The translations under genes were made by a program, and so were the position numbers. Positions 206-29,182 of a DNA stretch of 64,000 nt are shown here, piece by piece. Within the stretch, counting starts at the first letter, position 1; every line of letters starts with the position of its first letter. The notes beneath the pieces were generated by a model. That model did no database searches and was not told the DNA's origin. It worked only from the letters and a program-made list of their open reading frames with translations. The stretch is from IMG/VR virus record IMGVR_UViG_3300042540_001399, positions 226,888 to 290,887 of that record; one strand, 5' to 3'.

Positions 206-277
206 GGTCGGTTCATCTAGGGGTCAGGATACAAGGTTTTCATCCTTGTCACACGGGTTCGAATCCCGTACCGACTA
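206..277 (+). tRNA. tRNA-Glu(TTC)
   Basis: Acceptor GGTCGGT/ACCGACT, anticodon arm CAAGG-TTTTCAT-CCTTG, T arm ACGGG-TTCGAAT-CCCGT; CCA not encoded. Confidence 0.93.
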
Positions 278-302
278 CAAACCTGTCAAGGTAGTACAGG
301 AA

Positions 303-418
303 GGTCAGGAGTGTAATGAGGCACGGTGCCAAGTCCTAAAGACACCACGGTCCAAGAGCAATTTGGACGCGAGAAGTTATAAGGTTGCTCATTGTAGGTT
401 CGAATCCTACCCTGACTT
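303..418 (+). ncRNA. Atypical tRNA-like RNA (116 nt) with enlarged central region
   Basis: Acceptor GGTCAGG/CCTGACT and canonical T arm GTAGG-TTCGAAT-CCTAC; no canonical 7-nt anticodon loop; ~47-nt extra region. Confidence 0.6.
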
Positions 419-420
419 CA

Positions 421-525
421 CGGTTCGGATCATCACCGAATAGTATGCCCAATACGATGAGAAATGAGGTGATACCTCATATGGGACTTCTGATAGATAA
501 AGGATCTATTCGGTTTGACTAACCG
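421..525 (+). ncRNA. Putative structured RNA between tRNA genes
   Basis: ACCGAATAG(435-443)/CTATTCGGT(506-514) perfect 9-bp pairing, internal ATGAGGT-GAT-ACCTCAT hairpin, outer CGGTT/AACCG. Confidence 0.35.
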
Positions 526-574
526 CGGGAAATATCAAAGAGGGTTGAAGAACTACGTACCCTCGAGTCCAATT

Positions 575-649
575 GGTCCATTGGTGTAGTGGCTAACATT
601 CATCCCTGTCACGGATGAGCCGCGAGTTCGATTCTCGCATGGACCGCCA
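575..649 (+). tRNA. tRNA-Asp(GTC)
   Basis: Acceptor GGTCCAT/ATGGACC, anticodon arm CATCC-CTGTCAC-GGATG, T loop TTCGATT, encoded CCA. Confidence 0.95.
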
Positions 650-671
650 AACTTATTAAAAATTAACCATT

Positions 672-941
672 ATGAAAACTTTTCAAGACTTGGAATTTAT
701 AAAAATAAATGATGCACCGTTTATGGTTGGTAAAAAATCCCGTATGCATTTTGATAATGGGTTCGGTGTATCTGTTGTATCACACTCTTATTCATATGGG
801 GGTCGTGATGGTCTTTATGAAGTCGCGGTCCTTGACTCTGACGACAATCTTACCTACGATACTCCAATAACCAATGATGTAATGGGTTACTTAACTGAAC
901 AAGATGTTACTAATGTCATGAAACAAGTTCAAGAGCTATAA
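672..941 (+). CDS. Hypothetical phage protein (89 aa)
   Basis: Clean ATG ORF with A-rich leader; no recognised motif. Confidence 0.7.
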   Translation: MKTFQDLEFIKINDAPFMVGKKSRMHFDNGFGVSVVSHSYSYGGRDGLYEVAVLDSDDNLTYDTPITNDVMGYLTEQDVTNVMKQVQEL

Positions 942-1026
942 AAGATGACAGTTTTTTTATTCATAACATTTTTAACGACACTTTTTTTGTTGAGAAAAAA
1001 AAGAAAGTTTTAAGTAGATAAAAAAA

Positions 1027-1100
1027 GGTCTCTTAGCTCATTAGGTTAGAGCAACTGACTCATAATCAGTAGGTGGTTGGTTCGATCCCAACAGGGACCA
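1027..1100 (+). tRNA. tRNA-Ile2/Met(CAT), most like the lysidine-type Ile2
   Basis: Acceptor GGTCTCT/AGGGACC, anticodon arm CTGA-CTCATAA-TCAG, overall resemblance to bacterial ileX-type tRNAs. Confidence 0.9.
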
Positions 1101-1145
1101 CAAAAGTATTGAATATTTTAAAACAGAAATTATTATTTATAATAT

Positions 1146-1219
1146 GCACCCGTAGCTCAGCTGGATAGAGCAACTGCCTTCTAAGCAGTAGGTCAATGGT
1201 TCGAATCCATTCGGGTGTA
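1146..1219 (+). tRNA. tRNA-Arg(TCT)
   Basis: Acceptor GCACCCG/CGGGTGT, anticodon arm ACTGC-CTTCTAA-GCAGT, T loop TTCGAAT. Confidence 0.95.
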
Positions 1220-1260
1220 CTTTTTTTTTATTTTTTTTTTGGAAATCAAAAAGTTTCCTG

Positions 1261-10269: not shown

Positions 10270-10758
10270 ATGAATATTTTTTTTCTTGACTACGATACCC
10301 AAAAATGTGCACAATATCATTGCGATAAACATGTGGTCAAGATGGTATTAGAAACTGCACAACTTTTATGTGGGGTTCATCATACAACCCCCCAAGTTAC
10401 CCCCCAAGTTCCCTACAAGTTATCCCACAAAAATCACCCATGCGCAATATGGACTCGTGAAAGTTTATCAAACTACTTATATCTTTGTGATCTTGGTTTA
10501 GAATTATGTAATGAATATAGTTTTAGATATGGTAAAACACATAAGTCACAACAAGTAATCGAGTGGTGTCTTGATAATAAACCAAACATAGTTGATAAAG
10601 GTTTTACCACACCACCAAAAGCAATGCCCGATGAATATAAAGTTTTTGACGTTATTGAATCTTATAGAAACTACTATCGTGGGGCAAAAAAAAGTTTTGC
10701 TTCATGGAAAAATAGACAAATACCCGATTGGTTTCAAACTGATGAAGTATTTATATGA
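10270..10758 (+). CDS. Pyrimidine-dimer DNA glycosylase / endonuclease V-like protein
   Basis: MNIFFLD..CAQYHCDKHVVKMVLETAQLL and HKNHPCAIW motifs of the Pyr_excise family; TATTTTTG promoter element at 10258. Confidence 0.8.
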   Translation: MNIFFLDYDTQKCAQYHCDKHVVKMVLETAQLLCGVHHTTPQVTPQVPYKLSHKNHPCAIWTRESLSNYLYLCDLGLELCNEYSFRYGKTHKSQQVIEWCLDNKPNIVDKGFTTPPKAMPDEYKVFDVIESYRNYYRGAKKSFASWKNRQIPDWFQTDEVFI

Positions 10759-12296
10759 TAAAATCATATATGAAAGGTTTATTAAATGAACATTTGACTA
10801 GAATAAGATCATTGATGTCTATCAATGAATCTTTAGTTGATGCATACCCAAAATTTTCGAAAAAAATATTTGATGAAGTAGACCCTACTTGGGGTGGTGG
10901 GCCAAATTCGCATTCATCAAGACACCCTGATGCATCCGGCAAAGATTGGTTTAGTAATAACGCATACGACATCATGGCACCTGAAGGGACACCAATATAT
11001 TCAATATCGGAAGGTTATGTTGATAAAATTACCGACAATCCACCAGGTTTAAGATCAGTTGGTGGTAAGAGAATTTATGGGGACAGTTTAACCATTAGAG
11101 GAACAGGGGGTGATCCCGATGTTTTCTACACACATGTAACAAAAATTGTTGTTGAAGAGGGACAATACGTTGATAGGGGTCAATTATTAGCATTCATAAT
11201 CAAAGGGGAGTTGGGTATACCTGAACACGTTCATGTTGCAGTAAAAGTTGGTGATGTGAAAGATTTCTTAGATGTTGATGGAAACATAAACAGAGTCAAT
11301 ATTGATTTAGTGGATAGACTAAAAATCTTACCAACAAACAAGGAACTTGAAGTGACAACCGACCCAAAAACAATAATGGGCGCTGCGGCCGGTCTTACCG
11401 CATCAGCTATAAGTTCTTTAAATATTAATAGACCTGAGTCTGACATCAGTGGCATTGCAACAAGATTCGGTATTAAAGATACTGATGTTAACATGGATTC
11501 GGTATCAGGTGTTTTGAATAAAATAATATTATCTTCTGAAGGTCTTGGTACTGATGAAACTGGAATTCATGATGCAATAAAGAAATTAAAAAGTTGTTAT
11601 GAACTTGATGAAATTAACAAAATTGTAGAAAGAAAAGAAATCGACGGAAAAAAATACAAAGACATTTATGATTATATAAATAGTGAAATGAATTATGGTG
11701 ATGAGCTGTTTGTAAAAAGTTTAGTAAAAACCATAAATAATATATGTCCTGATACCGTAACTGATAAAGGTACTCAAATAGTGAAAGTAACAAGATCATC
11801 ATCTTTAGGATCTGGAATCGATAGAGTCAGTCCTATAAAATTATTAAATGATCTAAAATCATATGGATTATCTGATAAGGCCGCCAAAGGTGTTGTTGCG
11901 AATGCTTTTGGTGAAAGTGGGTTTAACGTTAAGGCTAAAGGAGATTCTGGACCCAACGCCGAAAACAACACAAGATCAATAAATATAGATGGTAAAAAAT
12001 ACTGTTCGTTTGGATTGTGGCAATATAATGTCTGTGGTGGTATGGGGGTTTCTTATTTGAAGAACTATAATATAGATGTTGACAGATCAACAGACGCTGA
12101 AAAAATCAGGGTTCTATTTGATTATAATAAACAAATTGAATTTATGTCTAAAAGAATTAAAGAAGAACAATCCAAAAGCGAAAAAGATGTTAGAACATGG
12201 ATTGATTGGATTGTTGATAATGTAGAAAGACCATCAGATAGATACGGTGCAAAAATGAAAAGACAAGAATTTGCAAAACAACAAGGTTGGTCTTAA
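10755..12296 (+). CDS. Multidomain wall hydrolase: M23 peptidase, annexin-like repeat, phage tail lysozyme
   Basis: M23 (AYDIMAPEGTPIY..YTHV..HVHVAV); GLGTDE annexin-like segment; tail lysozyme (GLSDKAAKGVVANAFGESGFN..SFGLWQYN). Confidence 0.8.
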   Translation: MIKSYMKGLLNEHLTRIRSLMSINESLVDAYPKFSKKIFDEVDPTWGGGPNSHSSRHPDASGKDWFSNNAYDIMAPEGTPIYSISEGYVDKITDNPPGLRSVGGKRIYGDSLTIRGTGGDPDVFYTHVTKIVVEEGQYVDRGQLLAFIIKGELGIPEHVHVAVKVGDVKDFLDVDGNINRVNIDLVDRLKILPTNKELEVTTDPKTIMGAAAGLTASAISSLNINRPESDISGIATRFGIKDTDVNMDSVSGVLNKIILSSEGLGTDETGIHDAIKKLKSCYELDEINKIVERKEIDGKKYKDIYDYINSEMNYGDELFVKSLVKTINNICPDTVTDKGTQIVKVTRSSSLGSGIDRVSPIKLLNDLKSYGLSDKAAKGVVANAFGESGFNVKAKGDSGPNAENNTRSINIDGKKYCSFGLWQYNVCGGMGVSYLKNYNIDVDRSTDAEKIRVLFDYNKQIEFMSKRIKEEQSKSEKDVRTWIDWIVDNVERPSDRYGAKMKRQEFAKQQGWS

Positions 12297-12559: not shown

Positions 12560-13490
12560 AATCAGGAAAAGACCTGAAACGTTCTTTGAAAAATAGATTA
12601 TCCGTTCAGGAAAAGTTTTGTCAGATTCTATGACAAGTAATTGGAATGAAATTTCCATCTTTGAATGATAAAGATATTGGGCCGTGTATAGTCCATAAAA
12701 TAAACTACGAAAGTAGGATAAAGTGAACCCTTAAGTGTGTTGGGTTTGCGGCTTCTTCGGGAGCTTGAGTACACAAGCGGGATACCATTTTGGCTTTAGT
12801 ATTGAGGGCAACGCTGTAAAGAATAAGGCAAAATGATTTGGCGATGTGGGTCGTCTGATTGAGGTGGGAACACCAATAGGAATAACCCGTAGGAATATTG
12901 CAAGACTCAAAGTCATCCAACTTTAATATTGCGTTTTCCAATATAATAGGTTACTTAAAACCAAGTGGAAGGACCACAAGGTAAGATGTAGAACGAGTGG
13001 TGTCGCTAACATCCTTCACTCAGGTTTACCAAAACCCGGTGATGAAGTAGTCTAAAAATATGGAGGTAGGGATATCTCACGGAGTAGTTGAGTATCGACT
13101 CGTTCAAAAGATGGGTTGGCTCGGTTGGCGGACCACTACTTCGACAATCCACGACACAAAACTTATGACTATTGAATTAAGTCCATTAATTAATACATTA
13201 AGGAAAAGTGTCCGTCAGGTTTGGATGAAAGGTGACTACATAGTAATGAGCCGTTCATTGCACACAGAGATCCCAAGTCGATGTGTAATTATCCGAAAAA
13301 CCTTTAGTCCCGCAAGGACGAGTTGGGAAGGCATTCTCGAAAAGAGTAGATTAGGATGAGAGTAATTCAAACCTTAAGGAGTGGTAAACCTAAAAGACCG
13401 TCACTGAGAAATACTTCTCAAAAGGAAGTGGATAAGAGTAGAAACAATAATGACTCTAAAGGTTCTCACACAAACGTGTAATCTCAGCGT
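12560..13490 (+). ncRNA. Large structured ncRNA, GOLLD-like
   Basis: ~0.9 kb without a credible ORF, GC-richer than flanks, bracketed by promoter and terminator; tetraloop hairpins CTAC-GAAA-GTAG (12705-12716) and GCTTC-TTCG-GGAGC (12751-12764); long-range pairs GGAGTAG/CTACTTC (13081/13136) and CTGAGA/TCTCAG (13404/13482); boundaries approximate. Confidence 0.65.
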
Positions 13491-13523
13491 TTTATTTTAA
13501 TGGAGCCACCGGTAAAGAACATT

Positions 13524-14377: not shown

Positions 14378-14929
14378 TTATTTGTCAAAAACATTTGTAT
14401 CACTATCGGTGAACATTTCATTAAAATCCCTAGTATCTACAGAATATACCCCTTTGTAGTCATCACCATCCTTCCAAATAATTTGTAACTTAGGGTAGTT
14501 AGGATTATCTTTCAAATTGATGATCATTAATTTTTCTGTAATATCATTGTAATACCCTGTTTTATCTGTTACTGAAAAAAATGCAAAATCGGCGTTAGAT
14601 TTAATCATTTTAATATCTAAAGTGTATGTTTTATCAACGATAGAGTCATTTTGGTCGTAATCATAAAAATGATGACTTAATACGTTTTTATCAAAATCAA
14701 AAGTATAAATTTGAAATCCTTCAGTGATAGAATCACTAATTTTATTTTTGAATGAACCTACAGACATTGGGAAATCGGTATAATCAATCTGTTTTGTTGA
14801 ATTAACAAAGATTTGTTTGGTCCCATCCAAAGGTTGTGATTTTGTCCCTGTGAATACTTCTTTAGTAACAAAAGATGAAAAAAGTACTATTGATAAAAGT
14901 ACGAAGATGGATTTGAAGATTGTTTTCAT
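14378..14929 (-). CDS. Exported hypothetical protein
   Basis: Signal-peptide-like N-terminus MKTIFKSIFVLLSIVLFSSF; TATATTTG element on the minus strand at 14967-14974. Confidence 0.7.
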   Translation of the reverse strand: MKTIFKSIFVLLSIVLFSSFVTKEVFTGTKSQPLDGTKQIFVNSTKQIDYTDFPMSVGSFKNKISDSITEGFQIYTFDFDKNVLSHHFYDYDQNDSIVDKTYTLDIKMIKSNADFAFFSVTDKTGYYNDITEKLMIINLKDNPNYPKLQIIWKDGDDYKGVYSVDTRDFNEMFTDSDTNVFDK

Positions 14930-15051
14930 GGGTTTTTATTTTTTAGTTATTAAATTATTAATAATACAAATATATGTGGTTTTTTTTAATTTACAAACAC
15001 AAAATTTGTTTTTTTTCTTTTTTCCCCATCAAATATGATGGGGATTTCAGA

Positions 15052-15442
15052 TGGTGGAGGCGGAGGGACTCGAACCCTCGTCCATAATATCCTGTCAGAT
15101 AAGGACTACATGTTTAGGTTGATATTTTCTAATATCCCAAAATAGTTGATTTGTTCTTCACCATCGTAAATCAACAACCAATGGTCCCGAATCGGATTTA
15201 GAGAGCCATCCGGTGTGCTCTATCAAACTACGACTTCTGTTGCTAGGTTATATGTCTGCCGACCCCCCGTTTCCGTAAACTTCTTAAGCTACAGTAACTT
15301 CAGAACCTCTTACTAATCCAAGAGTTTCCATTTTGTTTAGCACATTGCCAGTTGTTTTCTAAGTCAGTTTTTAAAGAGATTAACTCAGTCCCTACATGCC
15401 CTTATTCTTCAGCCAATACCTGTCAAATCCAAAAACGCCCCC
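15052..15442 (-). ncRNA. ssrA: tmRNA
   Basis: 5' GGGGGCGTTTTTGGATTTGACAGG; 3' GAGGGTTCGAGTCCCTCCGCCTCCACCA; G3.U70 wobble in the acceptor stem; internal tag ORF 15349-15284. Confidence 0.93.
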
Positions 15443-15534
15443 ATATTTTCAATGAACTTTTAATATAAATATTATAAGTACAAATATAAGTACTATTTTA
15501 ATTATATCCAAATTTGGGTATATTTATTTTTAAG

Positions 15535-16614
15535 ATGTCTGAACACAGTGAAATATACGATTTTTTGAAAAAAGTTTCCAAAGGTGACACATCATTTATG
15601 CCATATAGTAGATGGAATTTACCTTACCCAATTTATGATATAAAGTATAACAGCCAATCACCAGCGTCAAGTGTTATTTGGATTGAATTTGAAAATACCG
15701 AAAAATATTTAAATGCCTTAGGGATCGATGATGATGAAGATATATTTGTTTGGAATAGATTTATGGAAAATTACTATTATGACGATTATGATTACTACCG
15801 TTATGAAGAAGATTGGAAAGAAGGTTATATTATAAAAGATTTCAATCCTGAAAACATCCGATTAGTTGAAAATATACTTATGTTATCTAATCCTTCATTA
15901 AGTCTAGATATTAATAATGATGAAAGTTGTTCTAATGTTTCCTTGTATTTGTCAAGAAGATTTGATGATATTGATTACATTATTAGTGAATTTGGTAATC
16001 TAAATGAAGATTGTAAACGAAGAGCGGTAGTTGACGTTTTAGATAATGAAACTAAAAATCCATTTCGTAAATTTGGTATCACTGAAATTTATAAAAGACA
16101 CAGATTCAAAACTACTGTTAATGTGTTATTACATTGGTATAACGTAATTGACAATAAAGAATTAGACCTAATTGAATTATTACAAGAACTACTGAAAAAA
16201 TTTGATAATGAAAGTAGAGGTAATTGGTATGAGTTAGAATATAATGTTTGGTGTGATGATTTTGACAATGAATCGTTTCAAAAGGAAACAAAAAGAAACT
16301 TAGAAAAAATTATAGAAAATTTGGAAGAAAGTATTGAAGGAAAGGTTGATCTTGAAACAATAAATTCCTTATATAATAAAGTCATAAGTTTGGGTGGGTT
16401 TGGTAGATGGATTAATATTAAAGAAAAGAAAGCTGAAGTTAACTTTAGAGATTTGGATACTAAAAAAGGGATACTAAAATTTTACTATAGAAGCCCACAA
16501 ACCGGAAAGGCAACTGAAGAAAGGTCTGTCAAAAATTTGGAAGAACTCAACTTATCACTTTATCAACCTGAGCTTTTTGAGCATGTAAAAAAAATCAAGA
16601 AAATTATATTGTAA
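15535..16614 (+). CDS. Hypothetical acidic protein
   Basis: Long ORF; ATG 15535 chosen because TATTTAT lies at 15521. Confidence 0.7.
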   Translation: MSEHSEIYDFLKKVSKGDTSFMPYSRWNLPYPIYDIKYNSQSPASSVIWIEFENTEKYLNALGIDDDEDIFVWNRFMENYYYDDYDYYRYEEDWKEGYIIKDFNPENIRLVENILMLSNPSLSLDINNDESCSNVSLYLSRRFDDIDYIISEFGNLNEDCKRRAVVDVLDNETKNPFRKFGITEIYKRHRFKTTVNVLLHWYNVIDNKELDLIELLQELLKKFDNESRGNWYELEYNVWCDDFDNESFQKETKRNLEKIIENLEESIEGKVDLETINSLYNKVISLGGFGRWINIKEKKAEVNFRDLDTKKGILKFYYRSPQTGKATEERSVKNLEELNLSLYQPELFEHVKKIKKIIL

Positions 16615-16643
16615 TTGTTAATTAATTTTCATAAATTTGTATA

Positions 16644-17429
16644 ATGGAAAGAAATTATAATTTACTCAAAGAAGTTTTGTCGGTGCCGTCTAAGACTTAT
16701 CAAGAAGATTTGTTAATACAATTTATTTGTGATTGGTTGGACCAAAACAATTTTGATTACTTTGTTGATGATTTATATAATATTTATGTAACTAAACAAA
16801 CTGATGAATCTGTTGAGTTTTTTCCTTGTGTAGTTGCACACACAGATACTGTACACAACATAGATAAAATAAATGTAAAAGAAGAAATGTTACCTGACGC
16901 CCAAGGTAATGTAAAACTTTCTTTAAAAGCTTATAATGACGAAGGTAATCCTACAGGTATTGGTGGTGATGATAAGTGTGGTGTTTATGCTTGTTTAGAA
17001 TTATTGAAAGAAATACCCAATTTAAAAGCTGCTTTTTTTGTGGCTGAAGAAACGGGATGTAAAGGGTCTTTCAATGCGGATCCAAATTTCTTTTCAAATG
17101 TTGGTTATGTAATTCAATTTGATGCTCCCGAAAACAACATGATTTCAGAATTCCTTATGAACAGACCAATGTTTGATAGAAATAGTGAATTTTTTAATGT
17201 TGGTGGTAAATTAATTACTGAACATTTTCCAAGTGACACAAAATATCACAAACATCCTTACACGGACATTTATCCTTTGAACCAAAAATTTGGTATGTCA
17301 TGTTTTAATGTTTCCATAGGTTACTACAATTACCACACAAAAAACGAATATGTTGTCGTAGATGACACCTATAATGGAATCAAGGTTGGTAAGTTAATGA
17401 TTGAAGAATTAGGTTGTACTAAACATTAA
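16644..17429 (+). CDS. M28/M20-family zinc metallopeptidase
   Basis: AHTDTVH, GGDDKCG, AEETG and FDAP metal/catalytic motifs. Confidence 0.85.
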   Translation: MERNYNLLKEVLSVPSKTYQEDLLIQFICDWLDQNNFDYFVDDLYNIYVTKQTDESVEFFPCVVAHTDTVHNIDKINVKEEMLPDAQGNVKLSLKAYNDEGNPTGIGGDDKCGVYACLELLKEIPNLKAAFFVAEETGCKGSFNADPNFFSNVGYVIQFDAPENNMISEFLMNRPMFDRNSEFFNVGGKLITEHFPSDTKYHKHPYTDIYPLNQKFGMSCFNVSIGYYNYHTKNEYVVVDDTYNGIKVGKLMIEELGCTKH

Positions 17430-17457
17430 AAAAGGAGGACTTTTAATCCTCCTTTTT
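17428..17457. terminator. Bidirectional terminator
   Basis: AAAAAAGGAGGA-CTTTTAA-TCCTCCTTTTT between convergent peptidase and clpC genes. Confidence 0.75.
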
Positions 17458-19503
17458 CTTTCTACCTTTTTTCTTGGGTTCAGGTTTAGATCTATCTTCT
17501 ATACTTATTGTTTGTGTTTCTCCTTCTCCCTCAACAAATAACATATAATCAGTTCCTTCGACAACTTCGTTTGTTAGAATTTTTTCAGAAATAAGATCTT
17601 CTATTTTATCTTGTATTGCTCTTTTTATTGGTCTTGCACCATATTGGTCATCAAACCCAACTTTTGATATGAAATCAATGACAGAATTTTCATATGAAAC
17701 TTTGTATTTCATAGATGATAATCTAGAAATGAGTTTATCAATTTCTAATTTAACAATTTTATCTATGTGATCTTTTTTAAGTGAATTAAAAATAATAACG
17801 TCATCAATTCTATTTAAAAATTCAGGTGCAAAAAACTTACTTAATTCTTTTTTAAGAATGTCTCTTTTATATTCTTCTTGGATTGCATCACTATTATTAT
17901 TTGTTTTAAAACCAACACCACTACCAAAATCCTGTAATTTCTTTACCCCAATATTTGATGTCATAATTATTAGGCAATTTTTGAAATTTATTTTTCTGCC
18001 TAATCCGTCAGTTAAATGGCCATCATCCAACAATTGAAGTAATGTGGAAAAAACATCTTTATTTGCCTTTTCAATTTCATCAAACAAAATTACAGAATAA
18101 GGTTTGTTCTTTACTTGCTCTGTTAATTGACCCCCTTCTTCATGACCAACGTATCCTGGTGGTGATCCTATCAAACGTGAAATGGTATGTTTTTCTTGAA
18201 ACTCACTCATATCTACCCTAATTAAACTATCTTCACTACCAAATATTTCTTTTGCCAATTGTTTTGCTAAAAAAGTTTTACCAACACCTGTTGATCCTAA
18301 AAATATAAAAGAACCAATTGGTCTATTTGGATCTTTTATACCTACCCTATTTCTTCTTATAGATTTAGAAATTTTACCTACAGCTTCTTCCTGTCCAATT
18401 ACATTTTTATTTAATGTTGTTTCAAGATTGACTAAAGAATTTTTTTCATCAATGTTTATTTTACTAACAGGAATTTTAGTCATGTTGGACACAACTTCGT
18501 AAATTAGTTCTTCAGGTATACCCCTTTTACTATTTTTAAGGTCTTCTTCAAATTTCTTTTTTTCTTCTTCAAGTTTTAAGAGAATACTTCTTTCACGATC
18601 CCTAAGTTCTGCCGCTTGTTCATAATTTTGTTTTTTTATGACATTAAGTTTTTCTTGTTTAATTTCTTGGGCTTCTATTTTCAATTTTTCAATTGACTCG
18701 GGTAGTTTAATATCTATTTGCATTCGTGACCCAACCTCATCTAAAATATCAAAAGCTTTATCTGGAAATTCCCGATCGGTAATATATCTATCCGCTAGCT
18801 CAACACATAACCAAAGTGAATCATCAGTGTAATTAACTTTGTGATGTTCTTCATACTTCGATTTACTTTGTTTCAGAATTTCAAAAGTTTCTTCTTTTGT
18901 TGATGGATCTACAATAATTTTTTGAAACCGTCTTTCTAAAGCCCCATCTTTTTCGAAATGTTTTCTATACTCATCTAAAGTGGTTGCTCCAATACACTGT
19001 ATTTCACCTCTTGAAAGTGCTGGTTTAAATATGTTTGATGCATCCAAAGAACCCGAGCTATTACCGGCACCAACCATAGTGTGAATTTCGTCGATAAAAA
19101 GAATAATGTTAGGCGTGTTTTGAAGTTCTTCTATTATAACTTTCATTCTTTCTTCAAACTGACCTCTATATTTTGTTCCAGCAACAATAGAATTTATATC
19201 TAAGGAAACTATCCTTTTATCTACTAAATTTTTTGGACAATCGCCACTATAAATCATCATTGCCAAACCTTCTGCAATTGCCGTTTTACCTGCACCTGGT
19301 TCTCCAATAATAATAGGATTATTTTTCTTTCTTCTTGAAAGAACTTGAGCAATCCTAAAAATTTCTTTTTCTCTACCAATTACTGGATCTAATTTACCTT
19401 GTTCGGCAAGTTTAATTAAATCTTTACTAAAATTGTCTAAAACAGGCGTTCCACCATCTGTCTTTTTTTTGTTTTTTTCATTATCATCTACAAAATCTAA
19501 CAT
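17443..19503 (-). CDS. clpC: ClpC-type Hsp100 AAA+ ATPase lacking the N-terminal Clp-repeat domain
   Basis: Walker A motifs GEPGAGKT and GSTGVGKT, IDEIH, FDEIEKA, UVR middle domain (KQNYEQAAELRDRE), FAPEFLNRID, GARPIKR; begins directly at the first ATPase domain. Confidence 0.9.
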   Translation of the reverse strand: MLDFVDDNEKNKKKTDGGTPVLDNFSKDLIKLAEQGKLDPVIGREKEIFRIAQVLSRRKKNNPIIIGEPGAGKTAIAEGLAMMIYSGDCPKNLVDKRIVSLDINSIVAGTKYRGQFEERMKVIIEELQNTPNIILFIDEIHTMVGAGNSSGSLDASNIFKPALSRGEIQCIGATTLDEYRKHFEKDGALERRFQKIIVDPSTKEETFEILKQSKSKYEEHHKVNYTDDSLWLCVELADRYITDREFPDKAFDILDEVGSRMQIDIKLPESIEKLKIEAQEIKQEKLNVIKKQNYEQAAELRDRERSILLKLEEEKKKFEEDLKNSKRGIPEELIYEVVSNMTKIPVSKINIDEKNSLVNLETTLNKNVIGQEEAVGKISKSIRRNRVGIKDPNRPIGSFIFLGSTGVGKTFLAKQLAKEIFGSEDSLIRVDMSEFQEKHTISRLIGSPPGYVGHEEGGQLTEQVKNKPYSVILFDEIEKANKDVFSTLLQLLDDGHLTDGLGRKINFKNCLIIMTSNIGVKKLQDFGSGVGFKTNNNSDAIQEEYKRDILKKELSKFFAPEFLNRIDDVIIFNSLKKDHIDKIVKLEIDKLISRLSSMKYKVSYENSVIDFISKVGFDDQYGARPIKRAIQDKIEDLISEKILTNEVVEGTDYMLFVEGEGETQTISIEDRSKPEPKKKGRKKKED

Positions 19504-25346: not shown

Positions 25347-27119
25347 ATGAGTCTAACAAAAGAACAAGTCATGTTAGAATATGTTAGGTGTATGAAAGAT
25401 ACTGAATATGCACTCAAAACATATTTACAAACATACGATAATACTGTTTCTAAGTACGTACCCTTACAACTTTTTCCCGATCAAGTATCATTATTAAAAG
25501 ACTATGAAGATTATGAAGAAAATATAGCCCTGAAATATAGACAGGCTGGGGTATCAACAGTTACTGCCGCTTGGGTGTCAAAACGACTAGTTTTTGCAAA
25601 AAAAAATCAACCCGAAAAAATATTGATCATTGCGAACAAATTAGACACCTCAATGGAAATGGCAAACAAAATAAGGGCATTTGTTGATCAGTGGCCATCT
25701 TGGGTAGGGGCCGGATTTTCGGTAGACAAAAACTCTCAAAAACATTACAAACTTATTAATGGTAGTGAAGTAAAGGCTGTTGCGACTTCTAAAGATGCTT
25801 TGAGGGGTTTTACACCAACAATACTTGTGTTTGATGAGGCGGCATTTATTGAAGCCGATAGTGACTTTTGGGCTGCTTGTATGGCTTCATTATCAACAGG
25901 TGGTAAAGTTATAGTAGTTTCGACCCCTAACGGATACGACCCAATTTATTATGATGTTTATAACCAAGCAGTTAAAGGAATCAACAACTTTAAAATTTCT
26001 GAAATGTATTGGTGGAGAGATCCGAGATACGCCAAAGATTTATATCTTGTACCTACAGATGACTTAGTTCATTATCTATTGAATAAAGATCAACAGGATG
26101 AATCTAAACATATATCCTTTGCCCATGTAGATCCTTATGAAAGAAACTACGATGAAATATCCAATTATTTCAAAGATGGGTACAAACCATGTTCAACTTG
26201 GTATGAACGTATGGTGAAAAAATTAAAGTATGACAAAAGAAAAATTAACCAAGAGTTAAATTGTGAATTTTTGGGATCAGGTGACAACGTTTTTGACAAT
26301 AAACAATTAGAAGATATAAAAAATAACACCTTATGTGATCCTTCAGGAAAAATGATGGGGAATTCACTTTGGGTTTGGAAAGATCCTATTTTGGGACATA
26401 GATACATAATGGGTGTTGACGTATCAAGAGGTGATAGTGAAGACTTCAGTTCGATACAAATCATAGATTTTGATTCAAGGGAACAGGTCTTTGAATACGT
26501 AGGAAAAATACCTCCCGATGCTTTGGCAGAAATAGCCTACAAATGGGGTATTATGTATAATGCATTTATTGTTGTCGATATAACAGGAGGTATGGGAATA
26601 ACAACTGTTAGAAAACTTCAAGAATTAGGGTATAAAAGTTTGTATGTTGATGGTGTAGACACAACAAGTATATGGTCAAACACAACCAAAATGGCAGATA
26701 AAATTCCAGGAATTAATTTCAATAATAAACGAGTACAAATTATTGCGGCTTTCGAAGAAGCGGTAAGACATAAGTTTAAAATAAAAAGTGTTCGTCTATA
26801 CAACGAAATGAACACTTTTGTTTATATAAATGGTCGACCTGATCATCAAAAGGGACAACATGACGACCTTATTATGGGAATATCTATGGCAATTTATGTC
26901 GGTGAATCTTCGTTCACAAAATTAGAAAAAGTCGCACAACAAGCTAAAGTTATGTTGGAATCTTGGACTGTAGCTTCAAATGACGCAGTATCTAAGGAAG
27001 TATACTTCAATCCAGTATTACCAAATTTAAATGTTAAAAGAGATCACTTTGGTAGGGAAATAAATTCAGCAACAAGAGAAGACTATGAAAAGTATGGTTG
27101 GTTATTTGGGGGTAGGTAA
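25347..27119 (+). CDS. Terminase large subunit (T4 gp17-like)
   Basis: KYRQAGVST Walker A region, FDEAAF Walker B, VSTPNG coupling motif, nuclease GVDVSRG and HDDLIM. Confidence 0.95.
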   Translation: MSLTKEQVMLEYVRCMKDTEYALKTYLQTYDNTVSKYVPLQLFPDQVSLLKDYEDYEENIALKYRQAGVSTVTAAWVSKRLVFAKKNQPEKILIIANKLDTSMEMANKIRAFVDQWPSWVGAGFSVDKNSQKHYKLINGSEVKAVATSKDALRGFTPTILVFDEAAFIEADSDFWAACMASLSTGGKVIVVSTPNGYDPIYYDVYNQAVKGINNFKISEMYWWRDPRYAKDLYLVPTDDLVHYLLNKDQQDESKHISFAHVDPYERNYDEISNYFKDGYKPCSTWYERMVKKLKYDKRKINQELNCEFLGSGDNVFDNKQLEDIKNNTLCDPSGKMMGNSLWVWKDPILGHRYIMGVDVSRGDSEDFSSIQIIDFDSREQVFEYVGKIPPDALAEIAYKWGIMYNAFIVVDITGGMGITTVRKLQELGYKSLYVDGVDTTSIWSNTTKMADKIPGINFNNKRVQIIAAFEEAVRHKFKIKSVRLYNEMNTFVYINGRPDHQKGQHDDLIMGISMAIYVGESSFTKLEKVAQQAKVMLESWTVASNDAVSKEVYFNPVLPNLNVKRDHFGREINSATREDYEKYGWLFGGR

Positions 27120-27130
27120 TATTTATAAAC

Positions 27131-27304
27131 ATGGGTAGTATAAGAAGAAAAAAAAGTGGTAAAATATTTGCCGGGTCAAACTTAGTTATAACCGGTGAAG
27201 GAATTTATAGTGTTAAAATTATAGAACCCACTTTTAGAAAAAAAAGTCAATACGACATTGATTCTAACACTACAACAACAACCACCACAAAAAGTGGTGG
27301 ATAG
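27131..27304 (+). CDS. Small basic protein (57 aa, not in ORF track)
   Basis: MGSIRRKKSGKIFAGSNLVITGEG...TTTTTTTKSGG*; TATTTAT at 27120. Confidence 0.55.
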   Translation: MGSIRRKKSGKIFAGSNLVITGEGIYSVKIIEPTFRKKSQYDIDSNTTTTTTTKSGG

Positions 27305-27361
27305 TTATATTATAACTAACAATAAACTTTATATTAAAAAAATATAAGTTAAATTTTGAAT

Positions 27362-29182
27362 ATGGAACAAAAAGAAAAAAATTTAACAGTCTGGCAAAGA
27401 TTGTCCAAAACGTTTGGACCTAATTCAACGTTAGGTATGGACGACCCTGTTTATAAGTTTGATAAAAAAGAAATATTAAAAACTACAGATAAGTCACAAT
27501 TTGAAAGAGATAAATTAGAAATACAACAAACTTTATTTCTTAATGACAATTGGAAAAAAATCGAAAACAATTTATATAGTCAAGCGGTTTATTATGAACC
27601 AAATAGAATTTCAGCTTTCTACGATTATGAATCTATGGAATATACTCCTGAAATATCAACAGCTTTGGACATATATGCCGAAGAATCTACAACATCTAAT
27701 CAAGACGGATATATTCTTCAAGTTTATTCAGAATCAAAAAGAATCAAAAGTATATTAGTCGATTTATTTAATAACAACTTAGACATAAATACAAACCTAC
27801 AGATGTGGGTCAGAAACATGTGTAAGTATGGTGATAACTTTGTTTATTTAAAACTAGACCCTGAAAAGGGTGTTGTAAGTTGCATGCAACTTCCAAACAT
27901 TGAAATTGAAAGACTTGAACGTGGTATGGAAACAAGGTCAACAAACACCACACCATCTATGAAAGAAAAAAATCTAAGGTTTGTTTGGAAAAATAAAGAC
28001 ATGGAATTCAACACATGGGAAATAGCACATTTTAGATTATTGGGTGATGATAGAAAATTACCTTATGGTACTTCTATGTTAGAAAAGGCCAGGCGTATTT
28101 GGAAACAATTAGTTTTGGCTGAAGATGCGATGTTAATTTATAGAACATCAAGAGCACCTGAAAGACGTGTATTTAAAGTTTATGTTGGTAATATGGATGA
28201 TAAGGATGTTGAAGCCTACGTACAAAGGGTTGCAAATAAATTCAAAAGAGATCAGATTGTTGATTCTAAAACAGGTAATGTAGACTTAAGATTTAATCAG
28301 ATGGCGGTTGATCAAGATTATTTTATTCCTGTTAGGGACGCTCAACAAACAATGCCTATTGAAACATTGGCAGGAGCCGCTAACTTGTCTGAAATTGCCG
28401 ATATTGAATACATCCAAAAAAAGTTACTTACTGCTTTGAGAATTCCAAAAGCTTATTTAGGGTTCGAAGAACCTGTTGGTGATGGTAAAAATCTTTCATT
28501 ATTAGATATTAGATTTGCAAGAACAATTCATAAAATACAAAAAAGTGTTATCGCAGAATTAAATAAAATTGCTATAATACACTTATTCCTGTTAGGGTTT
28601 GAAGATGAATTACAAAACTTTACATTAGGGTTGACTAATCCATCTAAACAAGCCGATCTTTTAATGGTTGAAGTTTGGAAAGAAAAAGTTTTATTATACA
28701 AAGACATGGTTACTGAAATTCCTAACTCATTACAACCGACATCAGCAACATGGGCTAAAAAACATATTTTTGGTTTTTCTGATGAAGAAATTAAACTTGA
28801 ATTACAACAAATTAGATTAGAAAGAGCCGTTGCAGCAGAATTAGCAAATACTGCAACAATAATAACCCATACAGGATTCTTTGATACGGTAGATAAACTT
28901 TATAAAACACAAACAGGATCCACCCAAACTGCAGGAGCCGCACCTGGAGCTGAAGGTGGGGCAGGAGCGCCACCACCTCCACCAGGAGGAGGAGCACCTC
29001 CTTCACCACCAGCAGGAGGTCCGTCTTCAGGACCACCAATTCCTGAATCATTTAAAAAAGATAATTTAAATTTATTACTTGAAAGTGACGATTTACTTGG
29101 GGATGAATTTTTAGATCTGTCTAAGGCATCAAATTCTTTGGGTGACATAGAACATGAATTAGATAAATTACTAAATAGTTAA
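27362..29182 (+). CDS. Portal protein (T4 gp20-like)
   Basis: YESMEYTPEISTALDIYAEE, IYRTSRAPERRVFKVYVGN, DYFIPVR, IQKKLLTALRIPKAYL; located between terminase and protease. Confidence 0.93.
   Translation: MEQKEKNLTVWQRLSKTFGPNSTLGMDDPVYKFDKKEILKTTDKSQFERDKLEIQQTLFLNDNWKKIENNLYSQAVYYEPNRISAFYDYESMEYTPEISTALDIYAEESTTSNQDGYILQVYSESKRIKSILVDLFNNNLDINTNLQMWVRNMCKYGDNFVYLKLDPEKGVVSCMQLPNIEIERLERGMETRSTNTTPSMKEKNLRFVWKNKDMEFNTWEIAHFRLLGDDRKLPYGTSMLEKARRIWKQLVLAEDAMLIYRTSRAPERRVFKVYVGNMDDKDVEAYVQRVANKFKRDQIVDSKTGNVDLRFNQMAVDQDYFIPVRDAQQTMPIETLAGAANLSEIADIEYIQKKLLTALRIPKAYLGFEEPVGDGKNLSLLDIRFARTIHKIQKSVIAELNKIAIIHLFLLGFEDELQNFTLGLTNPSKQADLLMVEVWKEKVLLYKDMVTEIPNSLQPTSATWAKKHIFGFSDEEIKLELQQIRLERAVAAELANTATIITHTGFFDTVDKLYKTQTGSTQTAGAAPGAEGGAGAPPPPPGGGAPPSPPAGGPSSGPPIPESFKKDNLNLLLESDDLLGDEFLDLSKASNSLGDIEHELDKLLNS

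What the first reader, a model, noticed from the sequence alone, without database searches (positions are those of the whole stretch)
15052..15442. Phage tmRNA with a long, non-canonical tag (GNVLNKMETLGLVRGSEVTVA*)
Seen: after the AACAACT resume context, the reading frame 15349-15284 gives 21 codons ending VTVA. Established: bacterial tags are usually ~10 aa and end in LAA/YALAA for ClpXP recognition. A TATTTAT motif lies upstream (15465-15471). Inference: the phage tag may avoid host ClpXP or redirect stalled products to a different protease route. The resume codon is inferred.
Basis: partly seen in the sequence, partly recalled or inferred. Interest (0 to 1): 0.6.

Follow-up and report, generated by a model that had tools for sequence, protein, structure and literature searches.

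The report
Jumbo-phage tmRNA with conserved 21-residue tag
A 291-kb freshwater phage carries its own ribosome-rescue RNA (tmRNA), found in lake RNA libraries, whose tag peptide is twice the usual length, ends in Val-Ala, and is conserved across a large phage clade; phage tmRNAs with odd tags are already known, and what this tag does is untested.

Summary
Window 15052-15442 (-) is a full-length tmRNA (Rfam 114 bits, E 6e-44) on a 290,887-bp, 99%-complete phage record.

GGC at 15349-15347 opens 21 codons (GNVLNKMETLGLVRGSEVTVA) and a TAA at 15286-15284.
- In 57 distinct relatives from viral contigs this frame stays open for 21-22 codons and always ends TAA. Arg is kept through AGA/CGT/CGC, and the length difference is one whole codon.
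- The A four bases before the resume codon is invariant.
- ARAGORN misses the window's gene but gives the same frame in 3 of the 4 relatives it calls.

The RNA structure covaries, with G3·U70 in 57/57. RNA-library contigs from four studies lie on the tmRNA but not on the gene beside it.

The phage has no SmpB or ClpP. The host is probably Bacteroidota, whose own tags here are 8-10 residues ending LAA or MAA.

The idea that the tag escapes ClpXP or feeds another protease is untested. An N-domain-less ClpC with a ClpP-docking loop sits 2 kb away in every relative. However, xVA ends are degradable in E. coli, and the two phages with the closest ClpC have no tmRNA.

Known phage tmRNAs (Bxz1, Bacillus phage G) already have non-canonical tags. 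This is a new member of a known kind.

The parts
15052..15442 (-). One-piece tmRNA gene, 391 nt, with the 3' ACCA encoded
   Evidence: RF00023 114.3 bits, E 6.2e-44, model positions 1-374. 57 distinct homologues in viral contigs. RNA-library contigs lie on 15054-15423.
15436..15442 (-). 5' strand of the acceptor stem (GGGGGCG). G3 pairs with U, the alanine identity pair.
   Evidence: The stem covaries (GC/CG/AU/UA at pairs 4-7) while G3-U is kept in 57/57.
15052..15079 (-). T-arm, 3' strand of the acceptor stem, and ACCA
   Evidence: T-stem pairs covary, for example GC/AU and GC/CG. Conserved across the family.
15361..15393 (-). Pseudoknot 1: stem 1 is tmRNA positions 50-54/64-68, stem 2 is 57-60/79-82
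   Evidence: Compensatory changes in both stems: AU/GC/CG at 50-68, GC/AU at 59-80, UA/CG at 60-79.
15350..15355 (-). Frame-setting upstream sequence ACAACU, with A at -4 (15353)
   Evidence: A at -4 is invariant in all 39 distinct upstream sequences of the 57 tmRNAs, while -1, -2, -3 and -5 vary. The same position as E. coli A86 (PMC2481249). Sampled Bacteroidota tmRNAs have ...ATAACT|GGC.
15284..15349 (-). Tag reading frame: resume codon GGC (15349-15347), 21 sense codons GNVLNKMETLGLVRGSEVTVA, stop TAA (15286-15284)
   Evidence: The frame is open for 21-22 codons and ends TAA in 57/57. There are 29 distinct ORF sequences and 23 peptides. Arg14 is encoded by AGA/CGT/CGC. The length difference is one whole codon. 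pN/pS is 0.45, against 0.63 and 2.0 in the other frames. ARAGORN gives the same frame in L080, L052 and L100.
15269..15298 (-). Helix 5 hairpin, with the stop codon near its top
   Evidence: RNAalifold consensus pairs tmRNA positions 145-157 with 161-174.
15481..15512 (-). Promoter-like TTTG (15512-15509), 20-nt spacer, TATATTTG (15488-15481), in the Bacteroidota -33/-7 pattern
   Evidence: TAnnTTTG lies 27-49 nt before the mature 5' end in 55 of 56 assessable family members, although the surrounding sequence diverges. The bipartite motif occurs 42 times genome-wide against 15.5 +/- 3.8 expected. Assignment as a promoter is inference.
15449..15458 (-). Conserved leader motif AGTTCATTGA, just before the 5' end
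   Evidence: Kept as AGTT(C/A)(T/A)TTGA in most relatives. It recurs before tRNA-Gln and tRNA-Leu(TAA) of the same genome. Function unknown.
15024..15043 (-). GC-rich hairpin 8 nt after the CCA end, followed here by an A-run rather than a U-run
   Evidence: Sequence. Most relatives have a hairpin plus T-run at this place.
17443..19503 (-). Neighbouring gene (association inferred): ClpC-type double AAA+ unfoldase, 686 aa, no N-domain, with a VGF ClpP-docking tripeptide
   Evidence: Matches S. aureus ClpC residues 153-798, E 2e-220, and GVGF aligns to the ClpC loop. Pfam AAA_2, AAA_lid_9, ClpB_D2-small, UVR. Lies upstream of the tmRNA in all 67 loci whose flank reaches.
16644..17429 (+). Neighbouring gene: M20-like peptidase, 261 aa, between the ClpC gene and the tmRNA
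   Evidence: phrog_4191 'peptidase' E 4e-35. Pfam Peptidase_M20 24.4 bits, just under the cut-off. Conserved in the block.

Best explanation
This is a working, phage-encoded, one-piece tmRNA of a roughly 291-kb T4-like jumbo phage from fresh water, whose host is probably a member of the Bacteroidota.

Shown:
- The RNA has all structural parts of a tmRNA, and they are maintained by compensatory evolution.
- The alanine identity pair G3-U70 is invariant.
- The resume codon is GGC at 15349-15347, four bases after an invariant A.
- The 21-codon frame is under selection at the peptide level across a large phage clade.
- Contigs from lake RNA libraries lie on the tmRNA but not on the flanking gene. 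This fits expression, but contigs cannot give the strand or the ends of the RNA.
- The phage encodes no SmpB and no ClpP.

Inferred:
- The RNA is charged by host AlaRS and delivered by host SmpB and EF-Tu to ribosomes stalled in the infected cell. Phage attack on host mRNA should make such ribosomes frequent.
- It frees those ribosomes and appends Ala plus GNVLNKMETLGLVRGSEVTVA to the nascent chain.
- The non-polar Val-Ala carboxyl end most likely acts as a degradation signal for an AAA+ protease.
- The conserved core (G1, K6, G11, L12, R14) points to a second recognition site, such as an adaptor or a particular unfoldase.

Which protease reads the tag is not known.
For: - tmRNA identity: Rfam 114.3 bits, full length.
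- Phage origin: 290,887-bp virus record, 99% complete, with a T4-type portal and terminase.
- Relatives: 57 distinct homologues.
- Structure: covariation in the acceptor stem, helix 2, both PK1 stems and the T-arm; G3-U in 57/57.
- Frame: open 21-22 codons and TAA in 57/57; synonymous and multi-base synonymous changes (Arg AGA/CGT/CGC, Leu TTA/CTT, Val by four codons); the length difference is one whole codon; pN/pS is lowest in this frame.
- Resume context: A at -4 invariant, matching the E. coli A86 ruler (PMC2481249) and the ...AACT|GGC context of Bacteroidota tmRNAs.
- Independent call: ARAGORN gives the same tag in 3 relatives.
- RNA: contigs from 4 RNA libraries of 4 studies lie on 15054-15423, several with no mismatch, with zero depth on 15518-16749.
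- Missing partners: no SmpB, ClpP, SspB or Lon in the phage.
- Host: 10 of 260 genes have a Shine-Dalgarno 4-mer and leaders are A-rich; TAnnTTTG boxes; portal similarity to Flavobacterium and Rhodothermus phages.
Against: - No direct evidence of alanylation, SmpB binding, tagging or degradation.
- The RNA evidence comes from assembled contigs, which cannot show strand or ends.
- The host is inferred. The best cultured portal match is a Microcystis phage (41%), so a cyanobacterial host is not excluded.
- The tag lacks the usual Ala-Ala end, so its role as a degron is by analogy.
- The window's copy has no U-run after the 3' hairpin.
Confidence: 0.78

Rival explanations
1. The tag is read by ordinary host machinery (ClpXP or another host protease). 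It is simply a diverged ssrA-type degron, and the phage tmRNA mainly adds ribosome-rescue capacity.
For: The C-terminus is non-polar and ends in Ala. The LVA variant of the E. coli tag is a standard degradation tag (PMC9382460). The phage has no protease core of its own.
Against: ClpX recognition centres on the terminal di-alanine (PMC9601184), which is absent in all 57 sequences. Residues far from the C-terminus are invariant, which a purely C-terminal degron does not need. The probable hosts' tags are 8-10 residues ending LAA or MAA.
Confidence: 0.35
2. The tag is a dedicated signal for the phage's own N-domain-less ClpC, which docks on host ClpP. Rescued fragments are then degraded by a phage-controlled route, independently of host ClpX or SspB.
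For: The ClpC-type gene lies 2-5 kb from the tmRNA in all 67 loci whose flank reaches, including loci fetched through the tmRNA alone. It keeps the VGF ClpP-docking tripeptide and lacks the adaptor-binding N-domain. The phage has no ClpP. The tag has a conserved core beyond its C-terminus.
Against: Conserved gene order inside one phage clade does not show functional coupling. The huge phages with the closest ClpC (LR745206 and LR756502, 58% identity) have no tmRNA over the cut-off. No binding or degradation data exist. A complex prediction was not possible because the tag is under 30 residues.
Confidence: 0.22
3. The tag is not a degron. The conserved 21-mer gives rescued fragments another fate, such as sequestration, membrane association or inhibition of a host protease by poor substrates. 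Alternatively, only ribosome release matters.
For: Conservation runs along the whole peptide, with invariant G1, K6, G11, R14. There is no Ala-Ala end. For E. coli phage growth, ribosome release rather than the tag is what matters (PMC2481249).
Against: If only release mattered, the peptide would drift. It does not: pN/pS is 0.45, and synonymous sites are near saturation between distant members. The invariant Val-Ala end is typical of C-terminal degrons. The tag has no similarity to any phage protein.
Confidence: 0.15
4. The true resume codon is the overlapping GCA (15348-15346), giving the very short tag AMC.
For: GCA is the commonest resume codon, and an A also lies four bases before it in the window.
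Against: That frame is 3 codons long in some relatives, 8-12 in most others and 20 or more in one, with unrelated sequences. The base four before GCA varies (A or G) across relatives, whereas the A four before GGC is invariant. Rfam aligns the resume codon to GGC. ARAGORN picks GGC in 3 relatives.
Confidence: 0.02
5. The gene is an inactive passenger or a decoy that titrates host SmpB, rather than a tagging RNA.
For: A phage element consisting of the tRNA-like domain only exists (mycobacteriophage DS6A), and a similar molecule has been shown to inhibit tmRNA, perhaps by titrating SmpB (PMC4131195). LR756508 carries a 112-nt element of that kind.
Against: The full architecture and the reading frame are conserved by selection over wide divergence. 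RNA-library contigs cover the tag region itself.
Confidence: 0.04

Closest known systems
Bacterial one-piece tmRNA (ssrA; Rfam RF00023), for example E. coli and Bacteroidota
   Same: tRNA-like domain with G3-U70 and ACCA, helix 2, PK1, an A four bases before the resume codon, a short frame with its stop in helix 5, and downstream pseudoknots. The resume context ...AACT|GGC is as in Bacteroidota tmRNAs.
   Different: It is carried by a phage, with no SmpB gene beside it. The tag is 21 residues ending xVA, against 8-10 residues ending LAA or MAA in nearly all of 72 Bacteroidota tmRNAs. Only the 3' tRNA-like part resembles those RNAs in sequence. ARAGORN calls all 72 bacterial genes but not this one.
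Mycobacteriophage Bxz1-group tmRNA
   Same: A phage-encoded tmRNA with a long tag that does not end in Ala-Ala: 25 residues ending AAALV.
   Different: Unrelated tag sequence, a different phage group and an actinobacterial host. It scores 73.9 bits and is found by ARAGORN.
Bacillus phage G tmRNA
   Same: A jumbo-phage tmRNA whose tag also ends in Val-Ala (AKLNITNNELQVA).
   Different: 13-residue tag with no sequence similarity, a shorter RNA (312 nt by Rfam) and a Bacillota host.
tmRNAs of huge phages (Al-Shayeb et al. 2020, PMC7162821)
   Same: Large phage genomes with tRNA arrays and tmRNAs, read as taking part in the takeover of translation. LR756508, whose portal is 39% identical, has a tmRNA with the same ATAACT|GGC context and an apparent 36-codon frame.
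   Different: That survey used ARAGORN, which misses 53 of the 57 members of this family. Some of those phages encode SmpB; this one does not.
Mycoplasma/Mesoplasma long ssrA tag read by Lon
   Same: A precedent for a longer, non-canonical tag that goes with a switch to a different protease (PMC9382460).
   Different: That switch is bacterial, follows loss of ClpXP, and has been shown by experiment. Here the protease is unknown.

Membership tests
tmRNA (Rfam RF00023, one-piece) | Covariance-model score above the gathering threshold over the full model | tested here: met
   114.3 bits against 47, model positions 1-374, E 6.2e-44
tmRNA (Rfam RF00023, one-piece) | tRNA-like domain: acceptor stem with G3-U70, T-arm, 3' (A)CCA | tested here: met
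   G3-U in 57/57 while neighbouring pairs covary; the T-stem covaries; ACCA is encoded
tmRNA (Rfam RF00023, one-piece) | Pseudoknot 1 shortly before the resume codon | tested here: met
   Both stems show compensatory changes. An 11-nt spacer separates PK1 from GGC in the window, and its length shifts by single bases in relatives. E. coli has 12 nt.
tmRNA (Rfam RF00023, one-piece) | Frame-setting A four bases before a GCN or GGN resume codon | tested here: met
   A at -4 is invariant; the resume codon is GGC or GGA in all
tmRNA (Rfam RF00023, one-piece) | Short internal reading frame ending in a stop within helix 5 | tested here: met
   21-22 codons plus TAA in 57/57; the stop lies at the top of the predicted hairpin
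tmRNA (Rfam RF00023, one-piece) | Alanylation, SmpB binding and trans-translation activity | not testable with these tools
   Needs biochemistry. No SmpB gene in the phage, so a host partner is assumed.
tmRNA (Rfam RF00023, one-piece) | Present as RNA | tested here: inconclusive
   Contigs of 4 metatranscriptomes lie on 15054-15423 and none on 15518-16749. Contigs cannot give strand or ends, and RNA libraries can hold DNA.
Canonical ssrA (ClpXP-type) degradation tag | C-terminal (L/V/M)-Ala-Ala with a free carboxylate | tested here: not met
   All 57 tags end (T/A/S/V)-Val-Ala. Di-alanine is the usual ClpX determinant (PMC9601184).
Canonical ssrA (ClpXP-type) degradation tag | Degraded by ClpXP | not testable with these tools
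   The LVA variant works as a degradation tag in E. coli (PMC9382460), so degradation is possible but unknown here.
Phage-encoded tmRNA | Lies in a phage genome, not in a host chromosome flanking a prophage | tested here: met
   A 290,887-bp virus record, 99% complete, with portal and terminase 10-14 kb away. The same context recurs in 67 viral contigs.
ClpC-type unfoldase (the neighbour at 17443-19503) | Two AAA+ modules, a short UVR-like middle domain, a ClpP-docking (I/L/V)-G-(F/L) loop | tested here: met
   Aligned to S. aureus ClpC residues 153-798, E 2e-220; VGF present; UVR motif at 278-307
ClpC-type unfoldase (the neighbour at 17443-19503) | N-terminal Clp repeat domain, which binds adaptors and phospho-arginine | tested here: not met
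   The match starts at ClpC residue 153, and the phage protein has only about 12 residues before that point

The most novel reading that the evidence does not exclude
The 21-residue tag is a two-part signal that has evolved together with the phage's own N-domain-less ClpC. During infection, products of stalled ribosomes would be tagged by the phage tmRNA and fed through phage ClpC into host ClpP. This would be a phage-controlled degradation route, separate from the host's ClpX/ssrA system, inside a wider phage RNA module of tRNAs, GOLLD and tmRNA.
Probability: 0.2. Interest if true: 0.8.

Novelty: new member of a known kind. Interest (0 to 1): 0.45.

Why it matters
Phage tmRNAs have been listed in surveys but hardly studied. 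This family is abundant: relatives of the neighbouring ClpC gene are in more than 550 viral contigs, near-identical DNA is in lake metagenomes of many studies, and the RNA turns up in metatranscriptomes. It is almost invisible to ARAGORN, the tool that surveys rely on.

The tag is under clear peptide-level selection and differs from every tag of the probable host phylum sampled here. It is therefore a natural test case for what a virus gains from writing its own tag: extra rescue capacity only, or control over the fate of the tagged proteins.

The tag also gives a direct handle for experiments, namely signature peptides for metaproteomics and a portable degron candidate for Bacteroidota.

Tried and rejected
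- ARAGORN on the window and on the excised region at -ps95, -ps90 and -ps80 found no true call; the only hit was a spurious permuted one at -ps80.
- blastn of the tmRNA against 50,697 phage records found no match.
- SmpB, ClpP, SspB and Lon_C searched in the whole phage genome: none found.
- A profile of the phage family against 72 Bacteroidota tmRNAs matched only the 3' tRNA-like part (up to about 32 bits), so no donor lineage could be named.
- Pfam, PHROGs and the ESM Atlas gave nothing for the two unknown neighbours, orf366 at 15514-16614 and orf183 at 14378-14929.
- The tag peptide compared with the six-frame translation of the phage gave no match better than E 0.2.
- The alternative frames (AMC; QCAKQNG...) were rejected because they are not conserved.
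- TATTTAT as the promoter was rejected in favour of the conserved TAnnTTTG box.
- A complex prediction of the tag with the phage ClpC or a neighbour was not run, because the tag is under the 30-residue minimum.
- The large protein searches were not used, because the finding is an RNA.

Full report
WHAT IS THERE

Rfam's tmRNA model matches window 15442-15052 on the minus strand over its whole length (114.3 bits, gathering score 47, E 6.2e-44).

The window is the last 64 kb of a 290,887-bp virus record judged 99% complete. The record is 31% G+C and has 22 tRNA genes. A T4-type terminase and portal lie at 25347-29182. The tmRNA is therefore phage-borne, not a host gene beside a prophage.

ARAGORN finds no tmRNA here, even at relaxed thresholds.

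THE TAG FRAME

The Rfam alignment places the consensus resume codon on GGC at 15349-15347. Reading from there gives GNVLNKMETLGLVRGSEVTVA and TAA at 15286-15284.

To test the frame I collected relatives in two ways.
- By the exact 24-nt 5' end: 17 viral contigs.
- Through the neighbouring ClpC-type gene: more than 550 viral contigs, of which the best 80 were kept.

A profile search found the tmRNA in these loci, giving 57 distinct full-length sequences.

- In all 57 the GGC/GGA frame is open for 21-22 codons and ends in TAA. The +1 frame runs from 3 to more than 20 codons and the +2 frame changes sequence freely.
- Among 29 distinct ORF sequences, G1, K6, G11, R14, V(-2) and A(-1) are invariant. 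Arg14 is written AGA, CGT or CGC, Leu12 is TTA or CTT, and Val3 uses four codons. The one length difference is a whole codon.
- pN/pS is 0.45 in this frame, against 0.63 and 2.0 in the other two. Between distant members the synonymous sites are almost saturated, for example 15 of 16 against 14 of 47 non-synonymous.
- Single-base insertions and deletions occur just upstream of the conserved ACAACU, as expected for non-coding sequence.
- The A four bases before GGC is invariant while its neighbours vary. This is the position of E. coli A86, the main determinant of frame choice (PMC2481249).
- Bacteroidota tmRNAs with G-initial tags have the same context...ATAACT|GGC.
- ARAGORN of the 57 relatives, and 3 of those calls give this same frame.

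IS IT A WORKING tmRNA?

The consensus fold of the 57 sequences shows compensatory changes in the acceptor stem, the long helix 2, the T-arm and a 3' hairpin, and in both stems of pseudoknot 1. The alanine identity pair G3-U70 is kept in 57/57. The stop codon sits at the top of the helix 5 hairpin. The region of pseudoknots 2-4 varies widely, with large insertions and deletions.

Upstream, a TAnnTTTG box lies 27-49 nt before the mature 5' end in 55 of 56 assessable sequences. In the window it is TATATTTG at 15488-15481, with TTTG 20 nt further up. A second motif, AGTT(C/A)(T/A)TTGA, lies just before the 5' end.

Most relatives have a hairpin plus T-run right after the CCA end. The window has the hairpin (15024-15043) but an A-run follows it.

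Assembled contigs from four metatranscriptomic libraries of four studies lie on 15054-15423. Several have no mismatch and they cover the tag region. Depth is zero on the neighbouring gene at 15518-16749. This argues for an abundant RNA rather than carried-over DNA. Contigs cannot show strand or ends, however.

PARTNERS AND HOST

The phage genome has no SmpB, ClpP, SspB or Lon, so it must use host factors.

The evidence for a Bacteroidota host is as follows.
- Only 10 of 260 genes have a Shine-Dalgarno 4-mer, and their leaders are A-rich from -14 to -2.
- The bipartite TTTG-N18-22-TAnnTTTG motif occurs 42 times against 15.5 +/- 3.8 expected.
- The portal resembles those of Flavobacterium phage immuto (39%) and Rhodothermus phage RM378.
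- The closest bacterial ClpC genes include Bacteroidales and Ignavibacteria.

Together these point to Bacteroidota. The best cultured portal match is a Microcystis phage (41%), so a cyanobacterial host is not excluded.

I sampled tmRNAs from 151 genomes of the phylum and read the tags of 72 with ARAGORN. Apart from two aberrant ARAGORN calls they are 8-10 residues, and nearly all end LAA or MAA (GENNYALAA, ANYNYALAA, DNNYSYRLAA, ADDYSYAMAA and others). None resembles the phage tag, and only the 3' tRNA-like part of the phage RNA resembles them in sequence.

WHAT THE TAG MIGHT DO

Selection on the whole peptide rules out the view that only ribosome release matters. The invariant Val-Ala carboxyl end looks like a C-terminal degron. 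The conserved core suggests a second contact.

Two kb away lies a 686-residue ClpC-type unfoldase.
- It aligns to S. aureus ClpC residues 153-798 (E 2e-220).
- It lacks the N-domain.
- It keeps a VGF ClpP-docking tripeptide.

The block orf298 - ClpC - M20-like peptidase - orf366 - tmRNA is present in all 67 loci whose flank reaches. The other 13 loci end before the expected place.

It is weak evidence, for three reasons.
- Gene order is expected to be conserved within one clade.
- The huge phages with the closest ClpC have no tmRNA over the cut-off.
- xVA ends are degradable in E. coli, where LVA is a standard tag variant (PMC9382460).

ClpX normally reads the terminal di-alanine (PMC9601184), so weaker recognition by ClpX is plausible but unproven.

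COMPARISON WITH WHAT IS KNOWN

Phage tmRNAs are on record for Bacillus phage G and the Bxz1 group of mycobacteriophages (PMC4131195), and for huge phages (PMC7162821).

I re-derived two tags. Bxz1's is 25 residues ending AAALV. Phage G's is 13 residues ending ELQVA. A huge phage with a related portal, LR756508, has a tmRNA with the same resume context and an apparent 36-codon frame ending PAAV.

Long, non-Ala-Ala tags thus seem usual for phage tmRNAs. A bacterial precedent for a long tag tied to a different protease is Mesoplasma and Lon.

The features new here are:
- the family itself, which is abundant in lakes and missed by ARAGORN in 53 of 57 cases;
- the depth of evidence for peptide-level selection;
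- the contrast with the probable host phylum's tags;
- the constant ClpC neighbour.

VERDICT

It is a new member of a known kind, of moderate interest.

Noticed in passing
window 13080-13490 (+): A GOLLD RNA (RF02032, 320 bits) lies 1.6 kb from the tmRNA and next to it in many relatives. RNA-library contigs of four studies lie on about 12900-13515 at much higher summed depth than on the tmRNA.
   Followed up: partly
L043 10641-10865; L047 6485-6708; L078 15340-15563: In three relatives the tmRNA gene is split in the T-loop region by a group I intron (RF00028, 90-95 bits). The tmRNA score drops to 49-55 bits there.
   Followed up: partly
window 17443-19503 (-), 16644-17429 (+), 15514-16614 (+): The block of N-domain-less ClpC (with VGF loop), M20-like peptidase and an unknown 366-residue protein, next to the tmRNA, is conserved in all relatives. 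The phage has no ClpP.
   Followed up: partly
window 15449-15458 (-); genome C1 about 221990-222000 and 225505-225515: The motif (A/G)GTTC(A/T)TTGA just before the tmRNA also precedes tRNA-Gln and tRNA-Leu(TAA), the latter straight after a terminator. It may be a phage promoter or a processing signal for stable RNAs.
   Followed up: no
whole genome G000 (window 1-64000 included): Almost no Shine-Dalgarno sequences (10 of 260 genes), A-rich leaders, and an excess of TTTG-N18-22-TAnnTTTG (42 against 15.5 expected). This is Bacteroidota-like expression signalling.
   Followed up: partly
window 206-1220 (+) and genome C1 221915-228107: An array of 22 tRNA genes; the last four (Glu, Asp, Met, Arg) lie in the window.
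   Followed up: no
L268 (LR756508 92434-92880) and L271 (LR756508 414804-414915): A huge phage with a related portal has a tmRNA (72 bits) with ATAACT|GGC and an apparent 36-codon frame ending PAAV, where ARAGORN calls a different frame. It also has a separate 112-nt element consisting of the tRNA-like domain only (58 bits).
   Followed up: partly
window 59369-62245 (+) and 10755-12296 (+): A 958-residue protein with a C-terminal papain-like (Peptidase_C1) domain, and a 513-residue protein with M23 peptidase plus phage tail lysozyme domains.
   Followed up: no
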